Virus record (IMG/VR): IMGVR_UViG_3300013104_000001
Coordinates: 124,001 to 188,000 of that record
Direction: 5' to 3' (one strand)
DNA length: 64,000 nucleotides
Part shown: positions 33,116 to 53,108 of the stretch, piece by piece
Position numbering within the stretch: the first letter of the stretch is position 1
Layout: every line of letters begins with the position of its first letter
Notes under the pieces: generated by a model
The model's database searches: none
What the model was told of the DNA's origin: nothing
What the model saw: only the letters and a program-made list of their open reading frames with translations
Position numbers and translations under genes: made by a program

Positions 33116-33814
33116 GTGGATAACACTACGGCGCAAGCTATCGGTAATTTTCTTGATCTTTTTCCCAATAGCATTCGTAATAACGTGGATATCGTGGAAG
33201 CGCCGGAAGGTGGCACCATTGCTTTCCACATCAGTACTAACCCGAAGATCAAAGTATTCGAGCCTCGGGTCTCTCGCCGGACCATGAATAAAGAAGACCG
33301 TAGTGTTCCAAGAGTTTCTGCTGCTGCTACCTTAAACGGTTGTCTCTCTGGATACGCTGCGGCAATCTTTGATTGGGAGACACCTGGTCCGTGGGCTGGC
33401 GGCTGGAAGATCTATGCACTACGTTATGATCTGGCGTTAAAACCGAATAAGAAGATTCTGGCTGATGTCGAGAGCACTGAAGAGATCTGGCTCGTTGGTT
33501 ACGATAAAGAACACCGGGTTTATCCGGCTGTCCCAATGGGTGAGTTCTTTTTTACCTCGATTGCCCGTCAGTCTACTGGCGAAAAGAATCGACCGCGGAA
33601 ACTTGCGGTTACGGCATACATTCGTGTTGGCGAAGGCTACACGCTTCCTTTGAATAAGACTACGTTATTACGCTCAGGATTTTACCAACTCACGTATAAC
33701 GACTACTATCAGGCAATGGATCTTCGGAACCCGCAGGATGTTATCGTTAAACCTATTTCAGAGTCTGTGTATCAAAGCTTTAAAAAGTTAGATGCCGGAT
33801 TGCTGAGTTATTAA
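33116..33814 (+). CDS. putative ADP-ribosyltransferase-fold protein
   Basis: FHIS (H38), FEPR, ED..VPRVSAA.TL.GCL, DVESTEEIW (E123) give an ART-like strand1-His / strand2 / strand5-Glu pattern. Recognised by eye only. Confidence 0.45.
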   Translation: MDNTTAQAIGNFLDLFPNSIRNNVDIVEAPEGGTIAFHISTNPKIKVFEPRVSRRTMNKEDRSVPRVSAAATLNGCLSGYAAAIFDWETPGPWAGGWKIYALRYDLALKPNKKILADVESTEEIWLVGYDKEHRVYPAVPMGEFFFTSIARQSTGEKNRPRKLAVTAYIRVGEGYTLPLNKTTLLRSGFYQLTYNDYYQAMDLRNPQDVIVKPISESVYQSFKKLDAGLLSY

Positions 33815-33830
33815 CTTATTCGGTGAAATC

Positions 33831-34616
33831 ATGCCAGCTAATATTTCCTTTACCTGTCAGGTGCTTCGCGGTACCAACAAAGCAGGTTTGTTAAAGCCGG
33901 ATGCTAACGGGTATTATACCGTTGTACTCGGTGGATTTAATATCCGCAATGAAATGGGTAACTTCTACCCGTTCAACAAATACCTGGAAGAGATCTTTAA
34001 GAACAGCTCAACCTTCATGCGTAAGATCGAGAAGGGGCAGCTGCGCGGAGAGTGTGATCATCCGCAACCGTGGAAAGGCATGACCGAACGTGAATGGTTT
34101 AGCCGTCTGCGTAAGATCGAAACCAGTCGTGTATCACATCACATCCGTAACGTGACGCTGGACTTCAACAACTATCGTAGTCAGCATGGCGAAACCATGG
34201 TGGCGGTATTAGGTGAAGTCAAACCTGCCGGTGGTGAACTCGGTGATAAACTGCGTGCCTCATTAGAGAACCCGGATGAAGACACTGCCTTCTCTGTTCG
34301 TTCTCTGACACTGGACCAACCAATGGTTACCGGTGCATGGCGTAAAGATATCTACGAGTGCGTGACCTGGGACTGGGTAGAAGAACCTGGTGTGCGTAAT
34401 GCCACTAAGTATCATTCGCCTGGGCTAGAGTCATTCGACTCGTATGAGTTCTCTGCACAAACTGTTGGCGATATCCTGCTGTCTGGTAACGCTAACGTGG
34501 GTTATGGTTTAGAAGCTGACGCAACTGACCCACAACCACTGCGTGACCTGATGAAAGATTATCAGGCTGAAGCAGGTAGTAAGATCCTCACTCGCAAGTC
34601 CTTTATGCGTTGGTAA
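33831..34616 (+). CDS. prohead (head maturation) serine protease (phiKZ gp175-like)
   Basis: LRGECDHP, AFSVRS, VTWDWVEEPG; C-terminal GLE motifs (PGLES, YGLEA). Confidence 0.9.
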   Translation: MPANISFTCQVLRGTNKAGLLKPDANGYYTVVLGGFNIRNEMGNFYPFNKYLEEIFKNSSTFMRKIEKGQLRGECDHPQPWKGMTEREWFSRLRKIETSRVSHHIRNVTLDFNNYRSQHGETMVAVLGEVKPAGGELGDKLRASLENPDEDTAFSVRSLTLDQPMVTGAWRKDIYECVTWDWVEEPGVRNATKYHSPGLESFDSYEFSAQTVGDILLSGNANVGYGLEADATDPQPLRDLMKDYQAEAGSKILTRKSFMRW

Positions 34617-47659: not shown

Positions 47660-49855
47660 ATGATCCTTTATTCAAACGACTGGATTAAATACCAAACGCA
47701 ACCACACGTGCATTACGAGACACCGAATAAGTCTTTTACTGAAATGGCCGCGAAGTATTACGGTATGAATGTGAAGAACTGTTTATTCCATCTCTCGTTA
47801 TTCAACCGTTCGTTGATTGGTGTCGATCCCCATTCTCCCAATTTGACTACTGAGCAGAAGACAGCAATTGCGGCAGAGTGTGCGATTAACTTTTGGTATT
47901 TTATTCGTGAGGTCATCCGCATTCCTGTAAAAGGTGTGGAAGGTGGTATCTCGTATATCGCTAACCGCGGAAACCTGGCGCTATCATGGCTCTACCTTTG
48001 CCACATCGATACCTTTCTGATACAACCACGTCAGACCGGTAAGTCGGTATCTACTGACTGTTTGATGTTGTGGCTCATTTACTTTGGTTCATCGAATAAC
48101 TCCTATTCACTGATTACCAAGGGTGACCTTCGTGCGGAGAACATTAAGCGTATCAAAGGGATGCGTGATATGTTACCGGGCTATCTTGTTCACCGTGATA
48201 AGAAAGACCCAGACAACTCCGAGTGGATCGGTTATCTGAACCTGAAGAACGTTTATAAAGCAGCGATCGCTCAGGGTAACGAAACCGCAGCAAACAACTT
48301 AGGTCGTGGTATTACCACGGCAACCATCCACATCGATGAAGGCCCGTTCCTTTCATTCATTGACGTCACGGTTCCGGCAGCACTGAACGCCACAACCAAC
48401 GCCCGTCGATATGCTGAGATGAACGGCACACCTCACGGCAACATCTTTACAACAACGGCTGGACGACGAGATTCACGTGAAGGTAAATACTTCTACGGCA
48501 TCTTGCAGAAAGCGGCTGTGTGGTCAGAGATCTATTTGGATTGCGTTGACTTCAAAGAACTCTCTGAACTTATCATGAACAACAGCGGTTCGGCGGCACC
48601 GGCTGTCAACATTACCATGTCACATCGTCAGCTAGGGTATACTGATGAATGGCTGCGTAAAGTTATCGCACAGAACCAGAACACCAAAGATTCAGCGGAA
48701 CGTGACTATTTAAACCGTTGGACCTCTGGTAACTTGACATCACCTCTTTCCATCGCACTGAACGAAAAGGTCACATCGTCAATGCGTGAAGTCGTCTGGG
48801 AAGAAGTCACCAAACAGAAATATATCATTCGCTGGTATATCTCAAAACGTGACATTGAAGAGAACCGAGGCAAGACCCATTATGTGATTGGGATGGATAC
48901 CTCGGATGCAACCACCACCGGGGATGGTATCACAGTTGTTATTCGTGATATCCGAGACATGGGTGTGGTCGGTGTCATGAACTTCCGTAACACTAACTTA
49001 GTACCTGTCTCCCAGATGGTTGCTGAGCTTTTGATTACTCACACTAACTCAACTCTGGTTATCGAACGTAACCGTGCTCAGAACTTAATCGATCACTTAT
49101 TGATTGAACTTCCTAAGCGTGGTATCGATCCATTCAAACGCATCTACAATACTCTGACAAACGATCAGACCGTTCGTCGTACAGAGTACCAGGAGATGGC
49201 GTCAACACCACTGGGCCAACGTACGCAGGAGTTCTATGACTCCAAACGTACTTGCTTTGGTTTCTGGACAGGTGCTCAAACTCGTTCGTTACTGTACGGT
49301 ACTGTGTTACAAGAATCGGCTAAGCAAACAGGCTGGCTTGTTCGTGATGCGGAACTGATTAGTCAGATTACTGGACTGGTTGCTAAGAACTCGCGTGTAG
49401 ACCACAAATCAAACTCACACGATGACTTGGTTGTTGCCTGGCTGCTCACGTATTGGTTTATCACCGATGCACGTCACCACGATTGCTACGGTATTAACGT
49501 TGGACAGGTAATGTCCGTCAAAGAGCGTACTCAAGTCTTCTCCGTGCAAGAAGAGGCATGGATCGAACAGCAAGAGCGCTATCGTGCCGAGTTGAGCGAC
49601 ATTATGGATCAACTCAAATCAACCACGAACCCAATGCTCCTCACCCGCCTTGAGAAGAAACTGGTGTTTGTGAAATCGAAGATTGTAGCAACGGATGAAG
49701 CTGCAGTCACTGTAGACCAACTATTACAAGAGGCGAAAGAGGCGAGATCATTGCGTGCACGAACTGATCGTGTTAACAGTTCTCCACTCCGTCGCCAAAT
49801 GGGCTACAAGCCACCTAGCGCACGACGTACGTTTGCTGGGGCCGGTTTCTTCTAA
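47660..49855 (+). CDS. terL: terminase large subunit (phiKZ gp25-like)
   Basis: Walker A QPRQTGKS, Walker B IHIDE, TTTAG coupling motif, nuclease IGMDTS and HDDLVVAW. Confidence 0.93.
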   Translation: MILYSNDWIKYQTQPHVHYETPNKSFTEMAAKYYGMNVKNCLFHLSLFNRSLIGVDPHSPNLTTEQKTAIAAECAINFWYFIREVIRIPVKGVEGGISYIANRGNLALSWLYLCHIDTFLIQPRQTGKSVSTDCLMLWLIYFGSSNNSYSLITKGDLRAENIKRIKGMRDMLPGYLVHRDKKDPDNSEWIGYLNLKNVYKAAIAQGNETAANNLGRGITTATIHIDEGPFLSFIDVTVPAALNATTNARRYAEMNGTPHGNIFTTTAGRRDSREGKYFYGILQKAAVWSEIYLDCVDFKELSELIMNNSGSAAPAVNITMSHRQLGYTDEWLRKVIAQNQNTKDSAERDYLNRWTSGNLTSPLSIALNEKVTSSMREVVWEEVTKQKYIIRWYISKRDIEENRGKTHYVIGMDTSDATTTGDGITVVIRDIRDMGVVGVMNFRNTNLVPVSQMVAELLITHTNSTLVIERNRAQNLIDHLLIELPKRGIDPFKRIYNTLTNDQTVRRTEYQEMASTPLGQRTQEFYDSKRTCFGFWTGAQTRSLLYGTVLQESAKQTGWLVRDAELISQITGLVAKNSRVDHKSNSHDDLVVAWLLTYWFITDARHHDCYGINVGQVMSVKERTQVFSVQEEAWIEQQERYRAELSDIMDQLKSTTNPMLLTRLEKKLVFVKSKIVATDEAAVTVDQLLQEAKEARSLRARTDRVNSSPLRRQMGYKPPSARRTFAGAGFF

Positions 49856-50242: not shown

Positions 50243-50284
50243 CAGCATAAGGAGAGGAGCGTAATGCTCCTCTCCTCTATGCCG
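50243..50284. terminator. bidirectional hairpin with CAGCATA/TATGCCG flanks
   Basis: AGGAGAGGAGC-GTAA-TGCTCCTCTCCT between convergent genes. Confidence 0.8.
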
Positions 50285-50299
50285 ATCTAATCGGATTTA

Positions 50300-50716
50300 T
50301 TACGCGTCAGGGTTCTGCGGTTGCAGCTCGACGTCTGGCGTTGTTACCGGTTTGTCGATCACAACAGAACCGTCAGTTGGCGGCGCTTCTGGATCGGCTT
50401 TACCAAAGTTTGGATCAACCGGCTCCGGTTCTTCCGGGCCCTTCTCCATGATCAGGGTCAGACCTTCGATGCCGTTAGACAGTCTGGTGATCAAACCGTC
50501 AATGCCTTCGATGCCTGAACCGATTTTGAAGTAATCAGGGTATTTGGCGGCCAGACCTGACTCAATCAGATTACCAGCTGGGTAGTCCATTGATTCTAAG
50601 CCTGAGTTAACATAGCCAGCTTTGTAAGCTTGCAGTCTGTTAAGGTCGGCCGTAAGCTCTTCAATACCTGCGGCGATATCGATGGGCTGACCAGACTTGG
50701 TAGTAAGGATAGTCAT
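50300..50716 (-). CDS. putative internal head protein, mostly G-x-E propeptide plus acidic Pro-rich tail
   Basis: AGIE, SGLE, SGIE, NGIE; N-terminus aligns with 50784..51746. Confidence 0.6.
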   Translation of the reverse strand: MTILTTKSGQPIDIAAGIEELTADLNRLQAYKAGYVNSGLESMDYPAGNLIESGLAAKYPDYFKIGSGIEGIDGLITRLSNGIEGLTLIMEKGPEEPEPVDPNFGKADPEAPPTDGSVVIDKPVTTPDVELQPQNPDA

Positions 50717-50783
50717 GTTTTCTAAACCTCTTCAGTTATAAAAAGGACAGGCCAAAGCCCACCACATATATATTTAGCAGTTT

Positions 50784-51746
50784 TTACTTAATAGATGCTA
50801 AGATAGCCTGCTCTACACCTTTGGCAACATCGAGCAGTATCTTCGCTGCGGCTTCTGCAATTTCTGTAACCTGCCAGGTCAAGAACTCCCAGAACGCGCG
50901 GTGATACAGTGCGTCAGCTAACCCTTTGGTCGCAATGTCTTCAAAATCAAAATCACCGAGACCATAATTAATACGTGCAGTTTCAGCAATCTCTTCAAGC
51001 TCACTTGCTGAGTCAAAAAGACTTAGAATCAGCGCGCCTGCTTTAGGAAGGTTTTCTTTACTGATTGCAAAGATACGATCGTTATCGTCTTGCAGTTTAT
51101 ATTCGGGCAACTTACCGTTAATCGCCTTACTTGGTAATTCAGGGGCTGCTTTGATCAGTTCGCCGGTTACGCTATCGGCATCTTCTTCTGATGCGTTCTT
51201 AGCTTTCTTACCAAACGGTTCGACTTTCTTCCAGTAGTCCTTCGTTTGCTTCTCGCTGTCGACCACGGCCGAGTGATAGAACTTAACCAGATCGCCGACT
51301 TTCTTAACGATCTCATCAAAGTCTTTAACACCGCCAATCAACTTAACAACCGCAGCAACTGAAACACTGCCTTTTGCACTGGTCTGTGCTTCAGCCCATG
51401 CTGAGTTTGCATAGGTCTTCTTCACCTCTGCAAGAATCGGCGCCGTCTGTTTGGTGATGATTGGTTTAGCTTTCCCACGCGCAAGCTTCTTGATTCCGGC
51501 AATACCTTTTTTCAAAGTATCGATCAGAGAGCCTATGCCTTCAAGACCAGAGTCGATCTTAAAGTGATTGCTGTATTTGGATGCCAGGCCAAATGCAACC
51601 AACGATCCTGTCGGGTCATCCAGTGATTCGACACCAACACTTAAGCGTCCCTGATAGAATTTCTCTAACATGGCCAGATCACGCTCAATACTCTCAAGGC
51701 CCGCATGCAGACCATACGTGCTAATAAACGCCTCAGTAATAATCAT
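50784..51746 (-). CDS. putative internal head (ejection) protein
   Basis: AGLE, VGVE, SGLE in the first 70 aa, followed by a helical domain. Confidence 0.65.
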   Translation of the reverse strand: MIITEAFISTYGLHAGLESIERDLAMLEKFYQGRLSVGVESLDDPTGSLVAFGLASKYSNHFKIDSGLEGIGSLIDTLKKGIAGIKKLARGKAKPIITKQTAPILAEVKKTYANSAWAEAQTSAKGSVSVAAVVKLIGGVKDFDEIVKKVGDLVKFYHSAVVDSEKQTKDYWKKVEPFGKKAKNASEEDADSVTGELIKAAPELPSKAINGKLPEYKLQDDNDRIFAISKENLPKAGALILSLFDSASELEEIAETARINYGLGDFDFEDIATKGLADALYHRAFWEFLTWQVTEIAEAAAKILLDVAKGVEQAILASIK

Positions 51747-51755
51747 GGTTATCTC

Positions 51756-53108
51756 TTACGAAGTATAATGTTGCATGGACAGCGCACGGATAATAACGTA
51801 AAGGAATACACCCACACGGACCGTTGCTACCGTAGCAGGGGCTTTGATACCCGTTGCCATTTTGACGATCTCATCACCGGCTTCACGCATCTTCAATACA
51901 GAGGCGTTAGAGGTACGGCTTGAGCGATATGCCCCACGCATCTTAGACACCACATCCGGGAAGTCATTCAGACGCAGGTTCTTCTGACTGATGTATTCAA
52001 AGAGATGCTGAATGGTTTCTTCAAGCAGATCATCGATCACACCGGACTTATCGTAACGGTAGTTCTGCGAGATGAACTTGAGTGCATCGATCAATGGCTT
52101 TTCAGGAATGGTGTTGTTGGAACGAACGACCATGTCAACGAGCTCTGGTCTGAACCAATCCGATTCAACCCCGACGATATTCTTGACATAGCGCACATAT
52201 TTAGTGACAGTCTTTTCGACATCACGGATATGTTTAACACCATCCAACTCAACCGTGTTCTTCCCTTCAACAACCATCGCTTCTTTTAACTTCACAGTAT
52301 GGAAGACGTTGTTGATTGAGTTGATCACATCACGCAAACGGTCCTGTACATCCCCGACCATATAAACGATGGCTTTGTCATCAACCATTCGCACATAGGT
52401 CTCGTAGTGAATACCGGTGCCTTTGGTAATGATCGATTTAGCACGCGCATCGATCAGTGCACCCCACGAACCGTATACCTTCAAGTCAAACTTCTTAGAG
52501 AGTTGCTTGTAGGTTTCCATTGCCACTGACTTGTTGGCAGGATAAGGGTAATCGTGGTTGAGAATCGACGACAGGTTTTTGTAGTGGAAGATACGCACCA
52601 CATTCATCTTCGACTCTTCGATCTCAGCCGGCGTTAACCCCACTGACTCGTTATGAAAAAGATGAAGGAGGTAAGGCATACATTGGTTAAAGGTATTACC
52701 GGTTACATGGAACTTCGGATTAATAAACTGGGTGCCATGCAGATCATAAGTCAGATCAACCTCATCGCAGTCCATAATGGTATCGAACCATTCATTACTG
52801 TCGGTGACGGTAAACTTGATCGGATAGACACCAATCAGGTTGGAACCAAAGAAGTCAATGTGATCCTGGTTCTTAGTGCGGAACCGACTGGCGTATTTTG
52901 CAATCGCTAATGCGGTAGCTTTATCAGCAACCAGGTTCGGACAGTTCTTCTTAAAGGCATCTTTGATCGACATGCCATTGCCCGGTCCAAAGCCCATGGC
53001 TTCCAGACCAGCAGAGACTTTAAGGTAACCCAGACTGTAATCAATCGGGTCACGGGTAGGATCAGGACTCTTGAGCGGGAAGAATCCAGTAAGGGCGCTG
53101 GCTAACAT
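51756..53108 (-). CDS. conserved phiKZ-like virion protein (gp32-like)
   Basis: HIDFFGSNLIGV, YPYPAN...TYKQLSKKFDLKVYGSW; AGLE near the N-terminus. Confidence 0.6.
   Translation of the reverse strand: MLASALTGFFPLKSPDPTRDPIDYSLGYLKVSAGLEAMGFGPGNGMSIKDAFKKNCPNLVADKATALAIAKYASRFRTKNQDHIDFFGSNLIGVYPIKFTVTDSNEWFDTIMDCDEVDLTYDLHGTQFINPKFHVTGNTFNQCMPYLLHLFHNESVGLTPAEIEESKMNVVRIFHYKNLSSILNHDYPYPANKSVAMETYKQLSKKFDLKVYGSWGALIDARAKSIITKGTGIHYETYVRMVDDKAIVYMVGDVQDRLRDVINSINNVFHTVKLKEAMVVEGKNTVELDGVKHIRDVEKTVTKYVRYVKNIVGVESDWFRPELVDMVVRSNNTIPEKPLIDALKFISQNYRYDKSGVIDDLLEETIQHLFEYISQKNLRLNDFPDVVSKMRGAYRSSRTSNASVLKMREAGDEIVKMATGIKAPATVATVRVGVFLYVIIRALSMQHYTS

What the first reader, a model, noticed from the sequence alone, without database searches (positions are those of the whole stretch)
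50300..51746. Two adjacent genes share a ~70-aa multi-G-x-E N-terminal module on different cargoes
Seen: AGIEELTADLNRLQAYKAGYVNSGLESMDYPAGNLIESGLAAKYPDYFKIGSGIEGIDGLI aligns without gaps to AGLESIERDLAMLEKFYQGRLSVGVESLDDPTGSLVAFGLASKYSNHFKIDSGLEGIGSLI. One protein continues into a ~250-aa helical domain, the other only into a short acidic Pro-rich tail. Established: phiKZ-like prohead proteases cut after (S/A/G)-x-E. Inference: a portable capsid-targeting propeptide, with the short gene being almost pure propeptide (scaffold or competitor). It could be useful for loading cargo into jumbo heads.
Basis: partly seen in the sequence, partly recalled or inferred. Interest (0 to 1): 0.6.

Follow-up and report, generated by a model that had tools for sequence, protein, structure and literature searches.

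The report
Shared cleavable propeptide on two head-protein paralogues
Two neighbouring genes of an Erwinia-type jumbo phage are paralogues of a compact branch of phiKZ-like internal head proteins; both keep the same N-terminal propeptide studded with predicted prohead-protease sites, and one has lost everything else, which extends known jumbo-phage head biology rather than adding a new kind of system.

Summary
The 138-aa (50300-50716, -) and 320-aa (50784-51746, -) proteins share an ungapped N-terminal region (42% identity over 84 aa, E 3e-19).

The window lies in a 287-kb Agricanvirus-like nucleus-forming jumbo phage. Its prohead protease is at 33831-34616. Cleavage sites mapped by experiment in Salmonella phage SPN3US (A-x-E) align with G-x-E in this phage's portal, protease, phiKZ_IP and gp50-like proteins, and approximately in its capsid protein. 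The strict motif G[LIVMTQ]E[SGA] occurs only 38 times in the proteome. Only these two proteins carry three within 90 aa.

The 320-aa protein models as a helical fold whose best match is the phiKZ internal head protein family, although Pfam PF12699 itself does not match. Its third G-x-E aligns, through a PF12699 paralogue, with the mapped maturation site of SPN3US gp53.

The short gene is a truncated paralogue, not a separate cargo. It is under purifying selection and is made abundantly in RAY.

The module travels almost always with its own C-domain. Rare exceptions give the "portable" idea partial support. Cleavage, head location and targeting are inferred, not shown.

The parts
50784..51746 (-). 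320-aa gene: compact phiKZ_IP-like (predicted) internal head protein, phrog_6709
   Evidence: ORF. phrog_6709 E 2e-97. AF2 pLDDT 87.8. Atlas fold match to a PF12699 cluster, TM 0.59 over 271 aa. hhalign to the genome's own PF12699 paralogues, probability 71%, E 3.8e-5.
51477..51746 (-). N-terminal module (predicted propeptide) of the long protein, residues 1-90
   Evidence: Aligned to the short protein. Module identity among the long paralogues averages 38% against 23% for the C-domain.
51693..51701 (-). G16-L-E18, predicted cleavage site 1 (conserved in about 9 of 14 relatives)
51627..51635 (-). G38-V-E40, predicted cleavage site 2 (G and E nearly invariant family-wide)
51540..51548 (-). G67-L-E69, predicted maturation site (site 3); the mature protein would start at G70
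   Evidence: Nearly invariant in 58 module instances. Aligns to AGLE-189 of the own 537-aa PF12699 protein, which aligns to SPN3US gp53 AQE-125 (site mapped in PMC10052503).
50787..51476 (-). Helical C-terminal domain of the long protein, residues 91-320
50300..50716 (-). 138-aa gene: truncated paralogue (module plus acidic Pro-rich tail), phrog_10834
   Evidence: ORF. phrog_10834 E 1e-43. dN/dS about 0.08-0.13 against AH06 and RAY. RAY gp185 and Deimos-Minion gp191 detected by MS at 66-68% coverage.
50447..50716 (-). N-terminal module of the short protein, residues 1-90
50660..50668 (-). G17-I-E19, site 1
50594..50602 (-). G39-L-E41, site 2
50507..50515 (-). G68-I-E70, site 3
50465..50473 (-). 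G82-I-E84, fourth site, found only in the short proteins, at the junction of module and tail
50303..50464 (-). 54-aa acidic, proline-rich tail, residues 85-138
   Evidence: Conserved with AH06; a different Pro-rich acidic tail in RAY.
50746..50763 (-). Weak hairpin followed by a T-run between the long and short genes, then a GAAGAGG ribosome-binding site
50248..50280 (.). Strong GC-rich hairpin between the convergent short gene and the 107-aa gene (likely bidirectional terminator)
   Evidence: Sequence read
51756..53108 (-). 450-aa core head protein (phrog_2921; SPN3US gp262 homologue), 9 nt upstream of the long gene; SAGLE-36 at 53001-53009
   Evidence: gp262 is suspected to be cleaved in SPN3US.
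33831..34616 (+). Prohead (head maturation) protease, with C-terminal PGLE-200 and YGLE-228
   Evidence: phrog_3014 E 5e-98. 36% identity to SPN3US gp245, whose AQE-203 autocleavage site aligns with PGLE.
47660..49855 (+). Terminase large subunit (context of the locus)

Best explanation
The two genes are tandem paralogues of a lineage-specific, compact branch of the phiKZ-type internal head proteins. It occurs in phages related to Agricanvirus, SA002, pEa_SNUABM_37 and Proteus phage 10. The shared N-terminal 85-90 residues are the family's propeptide.

Shown here:
- the homology of the two proteins;
- two nearly invariant G-x-E-(S/G) sites, plus one or two more;
- a cognate prohead protease in the same window;
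- the correspondence between G-x-E in this phage and experimentally mapped A-x-E sites of SPN3US.

Inferred:
- Both proteins enter the prohead interior through contacts made by the shared module.
- The protease then cuts after E18/19, E40/41 and E69/70, and after E84 in the short protein.
- This releases a ~251-aa helical internal (possibly ejected) head protein from the long gene.
- It reduces the short protein to 11-29-residue peptides plus an acidic tail of 43-54 residues.
- The short gene is a truncated copy kept by selection as a propeptide-only, sacrificial core or filler component, comparable in principle to T4 gp67/gp68. It may also tune how much of the long protein is loaded.
For: - Homology: (E 3e-19); the 14-sequence alignment.
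- Copy number at this locus is 0 in SPN3US and phiKZ, 1 in Proteus phage 10, 1 long plus 1 short in Agricanvirus, 3 in pEa_SNUABM_37 and 4 in SA002. This points to a paralogue array with one truncated member.
- Protease.
- Specificity: SPN3US gp53 AQE-125 aligns with own AGLE-189, portal ATE-161 with own SGME-216, the gp50 VATE site with own IGLE, protease AQE-203 with own PGLE, and capsid ATE-130 lies close to own YGTE (sites from PMC10052503).
- Motif statistics: 38 strict motifs in the proteome. Two or more occur in 12 proteins: the capsid protein, portal, protease, three PF12699 paralogues, homologues of the cleaved SPN3US proteins gp45 and gp47, the gp262 homologue, one unidentified 718-aa protein and these two proteins.
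- Superfamily link: hhalign probability 71%, E 3.8e-5, aligning site 3 with AGLEGIG of a PF12699 paralogue. BFVD matches are jumbo-phage virion and internal head proteins. The best Atlas fold match is a PF12699 cluster, TM 0.59.
- Function of the short gene: dN/dS 0.08-0.13. RAY gp185 was retrieved as number 18 at 66% coverage, and Deimos-Minion gp191 at 68%.
- The module is more conserved than the C-domain in 53 of 55 pairs of long paralogues. That is expected if the module contacts a common partner.
- Long propeptides cut at several sites, shared by paralogues and thought to act like the T4 capsid targeting sequence, are documented for SPN3US (PMC5694885, PMC10052503).
Against: - No proteome of purified virions or proheads exists for any phage that carries this family. 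The RAY data are from crude lysate.
- The 66-68% coverage of the short homologue can only be reached with peptides that span the G-x-E sites if the search was fully tryptic. An abundant uncleaved pool therefore exists.
- Glycine at P3 is essentially invariant in all 58 module instances, with no A or S alternatives. This could reflect structure rather than protease recognition.
- Pfam PF12699 does not match, even at E up to 1, and the profile-profile link is moderate.
- The family is absent from the experimentally studied phages phiKZ and SPN3US.
- Targeting by the module is inferred only by analogy.
Confidence: 0.6

Rival explanations
1. The module is a permanent structural or oligomerisation domain: a three- to four-helix unit that packs on the C-domain or drives co-assembly. 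On this reading the conserved G-x-E elements are helix caps or turns, not cleavage sites. Both proteins act uncleaved, in the head or elsewhere.
For: Gly and Glu are invariant with no A or S substitution at P3 in 58 instances. The sites sit at helix boundaries in the model. The high peptide coverage of RAY gp185 requires peptides across the sites if the search was fully tryptic. The module has moderate to good pLDDT inside a single globular model (pTM 0.74).
Against: The same extended motif, (S/A)-G-(L/M/I/V)-E-(S/A/G), occurs at positions homologous to mapped cleavage sites in the portal, the protease and phiKZ_IP proteins of this phage. Only these two proteins reach three or more sites in 90 aa, at p far below 0.01. 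The short proteins carry an extra site exactly at the junction of module and tail. Crude lysate necessarily contains unassembled precursor.
Confidence: 0.2
2. Both are non-virion late proteins, for example assembly chaperones for the adjacent core head protein or cytoplasmic factors. The resemblance to internal head proteins would then be a generic helical-bundle likeness.
For: No evidence places them in the virion. PDB searches return only generic helical bundles. Pfam finds nothing.
Against: The Atlas and BFVD matches are specifically to phiKZ_IP and jumbo-phage virion proteins, not to generic bundles. The genes lie in an operon-like arrangement 9 nt downstream of a core head gene. The motif clusters like those of proven protease substrates.
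Confidence: 0.12
3. The short gene is a decaying remnant of a duplicated long gene and has no function of its own.
For: It is clearly a truncated paralogue, and its tail is of low complexity.
Against: dN/dS is about 0.08-0.13, with synonymous sites saturated. It is conserved at 72-95% identity in at least 8 metagenomic clusters and in all Agricanvirus genomes. It has its own ribosome-binding site. It is detected abundantly by mass spectrometry in two phages.
Confidence: 0.03

Closest known systems
SPN3US gp53/gp54 (paralogue family A) and phiKZ gp93/94/95/162/163, the phiKZ_IP internal head or ejection proteins (Pfam PF12699)
   Same: Tandem paralogues, helical proteins and a fold match. Long N-terminal propeptides carry several x-x-E protease sites and are shared between paralogues. 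Site 3 of the module corresponds to the mapped gp53 maturation site. Copy number varies between phages.
   Different: There is no PF12699 HMM match. The proteins are shorter (320 aa against 425-540 aa) with a shorter propeptide (about 70 aa against 111-137 aa). They sit at a different locus, between the gp262 homologue and the terminase; the genome's true PF12699 array lies elsewhere. P3 is Gly, not Ala. The family is absent from SPN3US and phiKZ themselves. No experimental data exist.
T4 capsid targeting sequence (CTS) of IPI-III and Alt
   Same: An N-terminal peptide shared by several internal head proteins and removed by the homologous prohead protease after Glu. It is thought to direct proteins to the prohead core. 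This is the precedent for loading foreign proteins.
   Different: The T4 CTS is 10-20 residues with a single L/I-x-E site. This module is a folded unit of about 70-90 residues with 3-4 G-x-E sites. Sufficiency for targeting has not been tested.
T4 gp67 and gp68, small prohead core proteins cut into short fragments by gp21 (as summarised in PMC5694885)
   Same: A small, abundant protein predicted to be almost wholly consumed by the prohead protease. This is a conceptual match for the 138-aa gene.
   Different: No sequence relationship was tested or is expected. The short protein is a truncated internal-head-protein paralogue, is specific to one lineage, and cannot be the universal scaffold still missing in these phages.

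Membership tests
phiKZ_IP internal head proteins (Pfam PF12699) | Match to the Pfam PF12699 HMM above its gathering score | tested here: not met
   No Pfam hit for either protein at E up to 0.01, nor for the long one at E up to 1. Two PF12699 paralogues of the same genome score 131-220 bits.
phiKZ_IP internal head proteins (Pfam PF12699) | Remote sequence homology to true members (profile against profile) | tested here: inconclusive
   hhalign of the family against the four own paralogues of the PF12699 array: probability 71%, E 3.8e-5, 111 columns starting at site 3.
phiKZ_IP internal head proteins (Pfam PF12699) | Same fold | tested here: met
   The best Atlas match is a PF12699 cluster, TM 0.59 by query, 271 residues aligned. 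BFVD hits include internal head and virion structural proteins of jumbo phages. Both sides are predicted models.
phiKZ_IP internal head proteins (Pfam PF12699) | Located inside the head and present in purified virions | not testable with these tools
   Only crude-lysate mass spectrometry exists for the RAY and Deimos-Minion homologues.
Substrates of the T4 gp21 / phiKZ gp175 / SPN3US gp245-type prohead protease | A cognate protease is encoded by the phage | tested here: met
   Window 33831-34616, phrog_3014 E 5e-98, 36% identity to gp245.
Substrates of the T4 gp21 / phiKZ gp175 / SPN3US gp245-type prohead protease | Sites that fit the phage's own cleavage motif (small residue-x-Glu), clustered N-terminally | tested here: met
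   G-x-E is inferred as this phage's motif from positions homologous to mapped SPN3US sites. There are 3 and 4 sites in the first 85 aa, unique in the proteome.
Substrates of the T4 gp21 / phiKZ gp175 / SPN3US gp245-type prohead protease | Cleavage actually occurs | not testable with these tools
   This needs semi-specific mass spectrometry of heads or an in-vitro protease assay. The lysate coverage is ambiguous.
T4-type capsid targeting sequence | Short (10-20 aa) N-terminal peptide with a single cleavage site | tested here: not met
   The module is about 70-90 aa with 3-4 sites.
T4-type capsid targeting sequence | The same tag sits on unrelated passenger proteins | tested here: inconclusive
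   68 hits among 1.84 billion representative proteins, nearly all module plus own C-domain. Exceptions: the short family; P0060, with two modules and an unrelated C-terminus, a singleton; and P-loop fusions in which the module is internal.
T4-type capsid targeting sequence | Necessary and sufficient for packaging | not testable with these tools
   This requires fusion and deletion experiments.

The most novel reading that the evidence does not exclude
The ~85-aa module is a true, transferable head-loading and release tag of this phage clade. Anything fused to it would be drawn into the prohead and set free by the G-x-E protease. Nature would already have used it on an unrelated enzyme-like domain (P0060) and, placed internally, behind P-loop enzymes. 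The propeptide-only gene would be a dedicated decoy or core subunit that sets how much cargo is loaded. That would be a regulatory layer of head filling not described for any phage.
Probability: 0.2. Interest if true: 0.65.

Novelty: new variant of a known kind. Interest (0 to 1): 0.42.

Why it matters
How phiKZ-like jumbo phages build the interior of their very large heads is poorly understood. No scaffold protein has been identified, and the role of the long propeptides is unknown. This locus offers three things:
- a compact internal-head-protein branch with a short, well-defined propeptide;
- a natural propeptide-only gene, abundantly made, that could be deleted or titrated to ask what propeptides do;
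- evidence that the protease motif has moved from A-x-E (SPN3US) to G-x-E in this clade, which gives a simple rule for predicting its substrates.

RAY, a cultured relative with GFP-fusion and cryo-ET methods already published, has orthologues of both genes, so the ideas can be tested directly. If the module proves sufficient for packaging, it would serve nucleus-forming phages as the T4 capsid targeting sequence serves T4.

Tried and rejected
- HMM search of the whole 287-kb genome with the module and with the C-domain found only these two genes, with no third copy. RAY's third paralogue gp111 has no counterpart here.
- Pfam gave nothing for either protein.
- Foldseek against the PDB gave no significant hit. 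VIA-align against PDB representatives gave only generic helical bundles, Z up to 8.3, below the level that is meaningful for helical proteins.
- Complex prediction of the prohead protease with residues 1-95 of the short protein gave no verdict. It counts neither for nor against binding.
- An AlphaFold2 model of P0060 from a single sequence was unusable (pLDDT 41). The GNAT-acetyltransferase likeness of its C-terminus therefore rests only on an Atlas feature score of 0.92-0.94 and stays a lead. The word search found no relatives of P0060.
I did not resend those rows. I used an alignment of window sequences and search-returned proteins instead.
- The supplement of the RAY proteomics paper holds no peptide-level data for gp185 or gp186. 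The RAY cell-biology paper does not mention gp185-187.
- The idea that the short gene is a pseudogene remnant was rejected on dN/dS and the mass-spectrometry evidence.

Full report
**What is there.** The window is bases 124001-188000 of a 287,406-bp virus record with direct terminal repeats. DNA and protein searches place it beside the Agricanvirus jumbo phages of Erwinia: RAY, Ea35-70, Deimos-Minion and AH06, at about 75-80% nucleotide identity. RAY is a nucleus-forming, phiKZ-related phage.

Three genes lie head to tail on the minus strand:
- a 450-aa gene at 51756-53108;
- a 320-aa gene at 50784-51746, only 9 nt downstream;
- a 138-aa gene at 50300-50716, after a 67-nt spacer that holds a weak hairpin and its own ribosome-binding site.

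They converge on a small plus-strand gene and the terminase large subunit (47660-49855) across a strong hairpin. PHROGs assigns the three to phrog_2921, phrog_6709 and phrog_10834, all of unknown function. Pfam finds nothing.

**The observation.** The shared region extends to about residue 85-90.

**Paralogues, not two cargoes.** The 450-aa protein is a core head protein of phiKZ-like phages, with 290 phage records matching it. These include phiKZ-type phages and SPN3US, where it is gp262. The number of family genes between it and the terminase varies:

| Phage | Copies at this locus |
|---|---|
| SPN3US, phiKZ-type | 0 |
| Proteus phage 10 | 1 |
| Agricanvirus (this phage, RAY, AH06) | 1 long + 1 short |
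| pEa_SNUABM_37 | 3 |
| SA002 | 4 |

RAY has a further full-length copy elsewhere (gp111) that this genome lacks.

All full-length members carry the same two parts. The short gene is therefore a truncated copy whose C-domain was replaced by an acidic, proline-rich tail. Among the long paralogues the module is more conserved (mean 38% identity) than the C-domain (23%), in 53 of 55 pairs.

**Is G-x-E this phage's protease motif?** The prohead protease lies in the same window at 33831-34616 (phrog_3014, E 5e-98; 36% identity to SPN3US gp245). SPN3US cleavage sites are mapped by experiment as A-x-E (PMC10052503). In alignments:

| SPN3US mapped site | This phage |
|---|---|
| gp53 AQE-125 | AGLE-189 of the 537-aa PF12699 protein |
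| portal ATE-161 | SGME-216 |
| gp50 VATE | IGLE |
| protease autocleavage AQE-203 | PGLE-200 |
| capsid ATE-130 | within a few residues of YGTE |

So Gly replaces Ala at P3 in this clade. This is an inference from homology, not a measurement.

The strict form G[LIVMTQ]E[SGA] occurs only 38 times in about 89,000 residues. Twelve proteins have two or more:
- the capsid protein, the portal and the protease;
- three PF12699 internal head protein paralogues;
- homologues of the cleaved SPN3US proteins gp45 and gp47;
- the gp262 homologue;
- one unidentified 718-aa protein;
- the two proteins under study.

(The gp50 homologue carries a single strict motif.) Only these two have three within 90 residues, against a mean of 0.003 such proteins in shuffles. 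In 58 module instances drawn from 1.84 billion representative proteins, the Gly and Glu of sites 2 and 3 are almost invariant. A fourth site occurs only in the short proteins, exactly where the tail begins.

**What the long protein is.**
- AlphaFold2 gives a confident all-helical model (pLDDT 87.8, pTM 0.74).
- The PDB holds no relative.
- BFVD returns, after the family itself, virion and internal head proteins of jumbo phages.
- The best ESM Atlas fold match is a phiKZ_IP (PF12699) cluster, TM 0.59 over 271 residues.
- hhalign against the genome's own PF12699 array gives probability 71%, E 3.8e-5. It places SGLEGIGSLI (site 3) on AGLEGIGEFL of the 537-aa paralogue. That in turn aligns exactly with the mapped maturation site of SPN3US gp53.

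I therefore read the family as a compact, diverged branch of the phiKZ-type internal head proteins. The module is its propeptide and E69 is the maturation site. Strict PF12699 membership fails the HMM test.

**The short gene.** It is not a remnant.
- dN/dS is about 0.08-0.13 against AH06 and RAY, although synonymous sites are saturated.
- Eight further 137-138-aa clusters at 72-95% identity exist in metagenomes, plus one 89-aa fragment.
- In crude lysates RAY gp185 was retrieved as number 18 with 66% coverage and Deimos-Minion gp191 with 68%. The long RAY gp186 ranked 41 with 17% coverage (PMC6690015).

In-silico digestion shows that tryptic peptides avoiding the G-x-E sites can cover only 12% of gp185. 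If the search was fully tryptic, the lysate therefore held much uncleaved protein. A lysate contains unassembled precursor, so this neither proves nor refutes cleavage inside proheads.

If all sites are cut, the protein becomes peptides of 11-29 residues. The tail would be 43 or 54 residues, depending on whether GPE-95 is also cut, with net charge about -8 to -9.

**Is the module portable?** Mostly it is not. Of the 68 hits, nearly all are proteins of about 320 aa with the module and its own C-domain. There are three kinds of exception:
- the short family itself;
- P0060, a singleton at the first array position of an SA002-like contig. It has two tandem modules, six G-x-E sites and a C-terminus that does not match the family's C-domain. 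That C-terminus may resemble a GNAT acetyltransferase, but this is a lead only;
- five clusters in which a P-loop domain (phrog_4182) and a linker precede the module and C-domain, so the module is internal.

**Mechanism and confidence.** Most likely (0.6), both proteins are substrates of the prohead protease and are loaded into the prohead through the shared propeptide. The long one matures to an internal head protein. The short one is a sacrificial, propeptide-only component.
- Shown: the homology, the motif clustering, the presence of the protease, the correspondence of sites, purifying selection and expression.
- Inferred: head location, cleavage, targeting, and any scaffold or competitor role.

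Rivals are a permanent structural domain that is not cleaved (0.2), a role outside the virion (0.12) and a decaying remnant (0.03).

**Comparison with what is known.** Long propeptides cut at several sites, shared by paralogous internal head proteins and proposed to act like the T4 capsid targeting sequence, are already described for SPN3US and phiKZ (PMC5694885, PMC10052503). New here are:
- the compact sub-family at a different locus;
- the inferred shift of the motif from Ala to Gly at P3;
- a conserved, abundant propeptide-only gene;
- rare natural re-use of the module.

That makes it a new variant of a known kind, of moderate interest.

**Limits.** The complex prediction gave no verdict. 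No reads tools were used, and no sequence was taken for human.

Noticed in passing
window 33831-34616 and genome-wide (genome 6838-9144, 15265-18249, 257208-274415): This clade's prohead protease appears to use G-x-E, with extended consensus (S/A)-G-(L/M/I/V)-E-(S/A/G)-(F/I/L/M), where SPN3US uses A-x-E. The strict motif is rare (38 per proteome) and by itself picks out the capsid protein, portal, protease, phiKZ_IP paralogues and the gp45-, gp47- and gp50-like head proteins.
   Followed up: partly
window 51756-53108 (SAGLE-36 at 53001-53009): The core head protein homologous to SPN3US gp262 has a conserved SAGLE site near residue 36, also present in contig L026. The SPN3US authors suspected gp262 of being an unconfirmed protease substrate.
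   Followed up: partly
L014 1450-2415 (RAY gp111); L003 8249-9217 (SA002 MGA_182); L017 7147-8115 (pEa_SNUABM_37_00195): One paralogue sub-family has a hydrophobic, transmembrane-like stretch (for example GLGTMVLLGVAIGGGVAAYKKLM) directly after the third G-x-E site. RAY carries such a copy far from the main locus. This genome has none.
   Followed up: partly
L019 3001-3960 (AH06_196) against window 50784-51746: The flanking 450-aa gene is 89% identical between AH06 and this phage and the short gene 75%. The long gene's C-domain is only 30% identical, no closer than that of Proteus phage 10. The C-domain evolves much faster than its surroundings or has been exchanged.
   Followed up: partly
L026 6358-7374 (P0060): A metagenomic SA002-like phage has, at the first array position, a protein with two tandem modules, six G-x-E sites and an unrelated alpha/beta C-terminus. 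It is possibly GNAT-like by language-model features only, and it is a singleton in the databases.
   Followed up: partly
L027 8001-9518 (P0053); also P0058, P0067, P0070, P0081: In other large phages a P-loop NTPase-like domain (phrog_4182, GxGKS motif) is fused upstream of the module and C-domain. Cleavage at the module's G-x-E sites would separate the enzyme from the helical domain.
   Followed up: no
window 50248-50280: A strong GC-rich hairpin (stem AGAGGAGAGGAGC, loop ATTAC) lies between the convergent short gene and the 107-aa gene. It is a likely bidirectional terminator.
   Followed up: no
window 33116-33814: A 232-aa protein (phrog_5043) lies directly upstream of the protease. SPN3US is reported to carry a truncated, cryptic paralogue of its protease. 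Whether this ORF is the counterpart was not checked.
   Followed up: no
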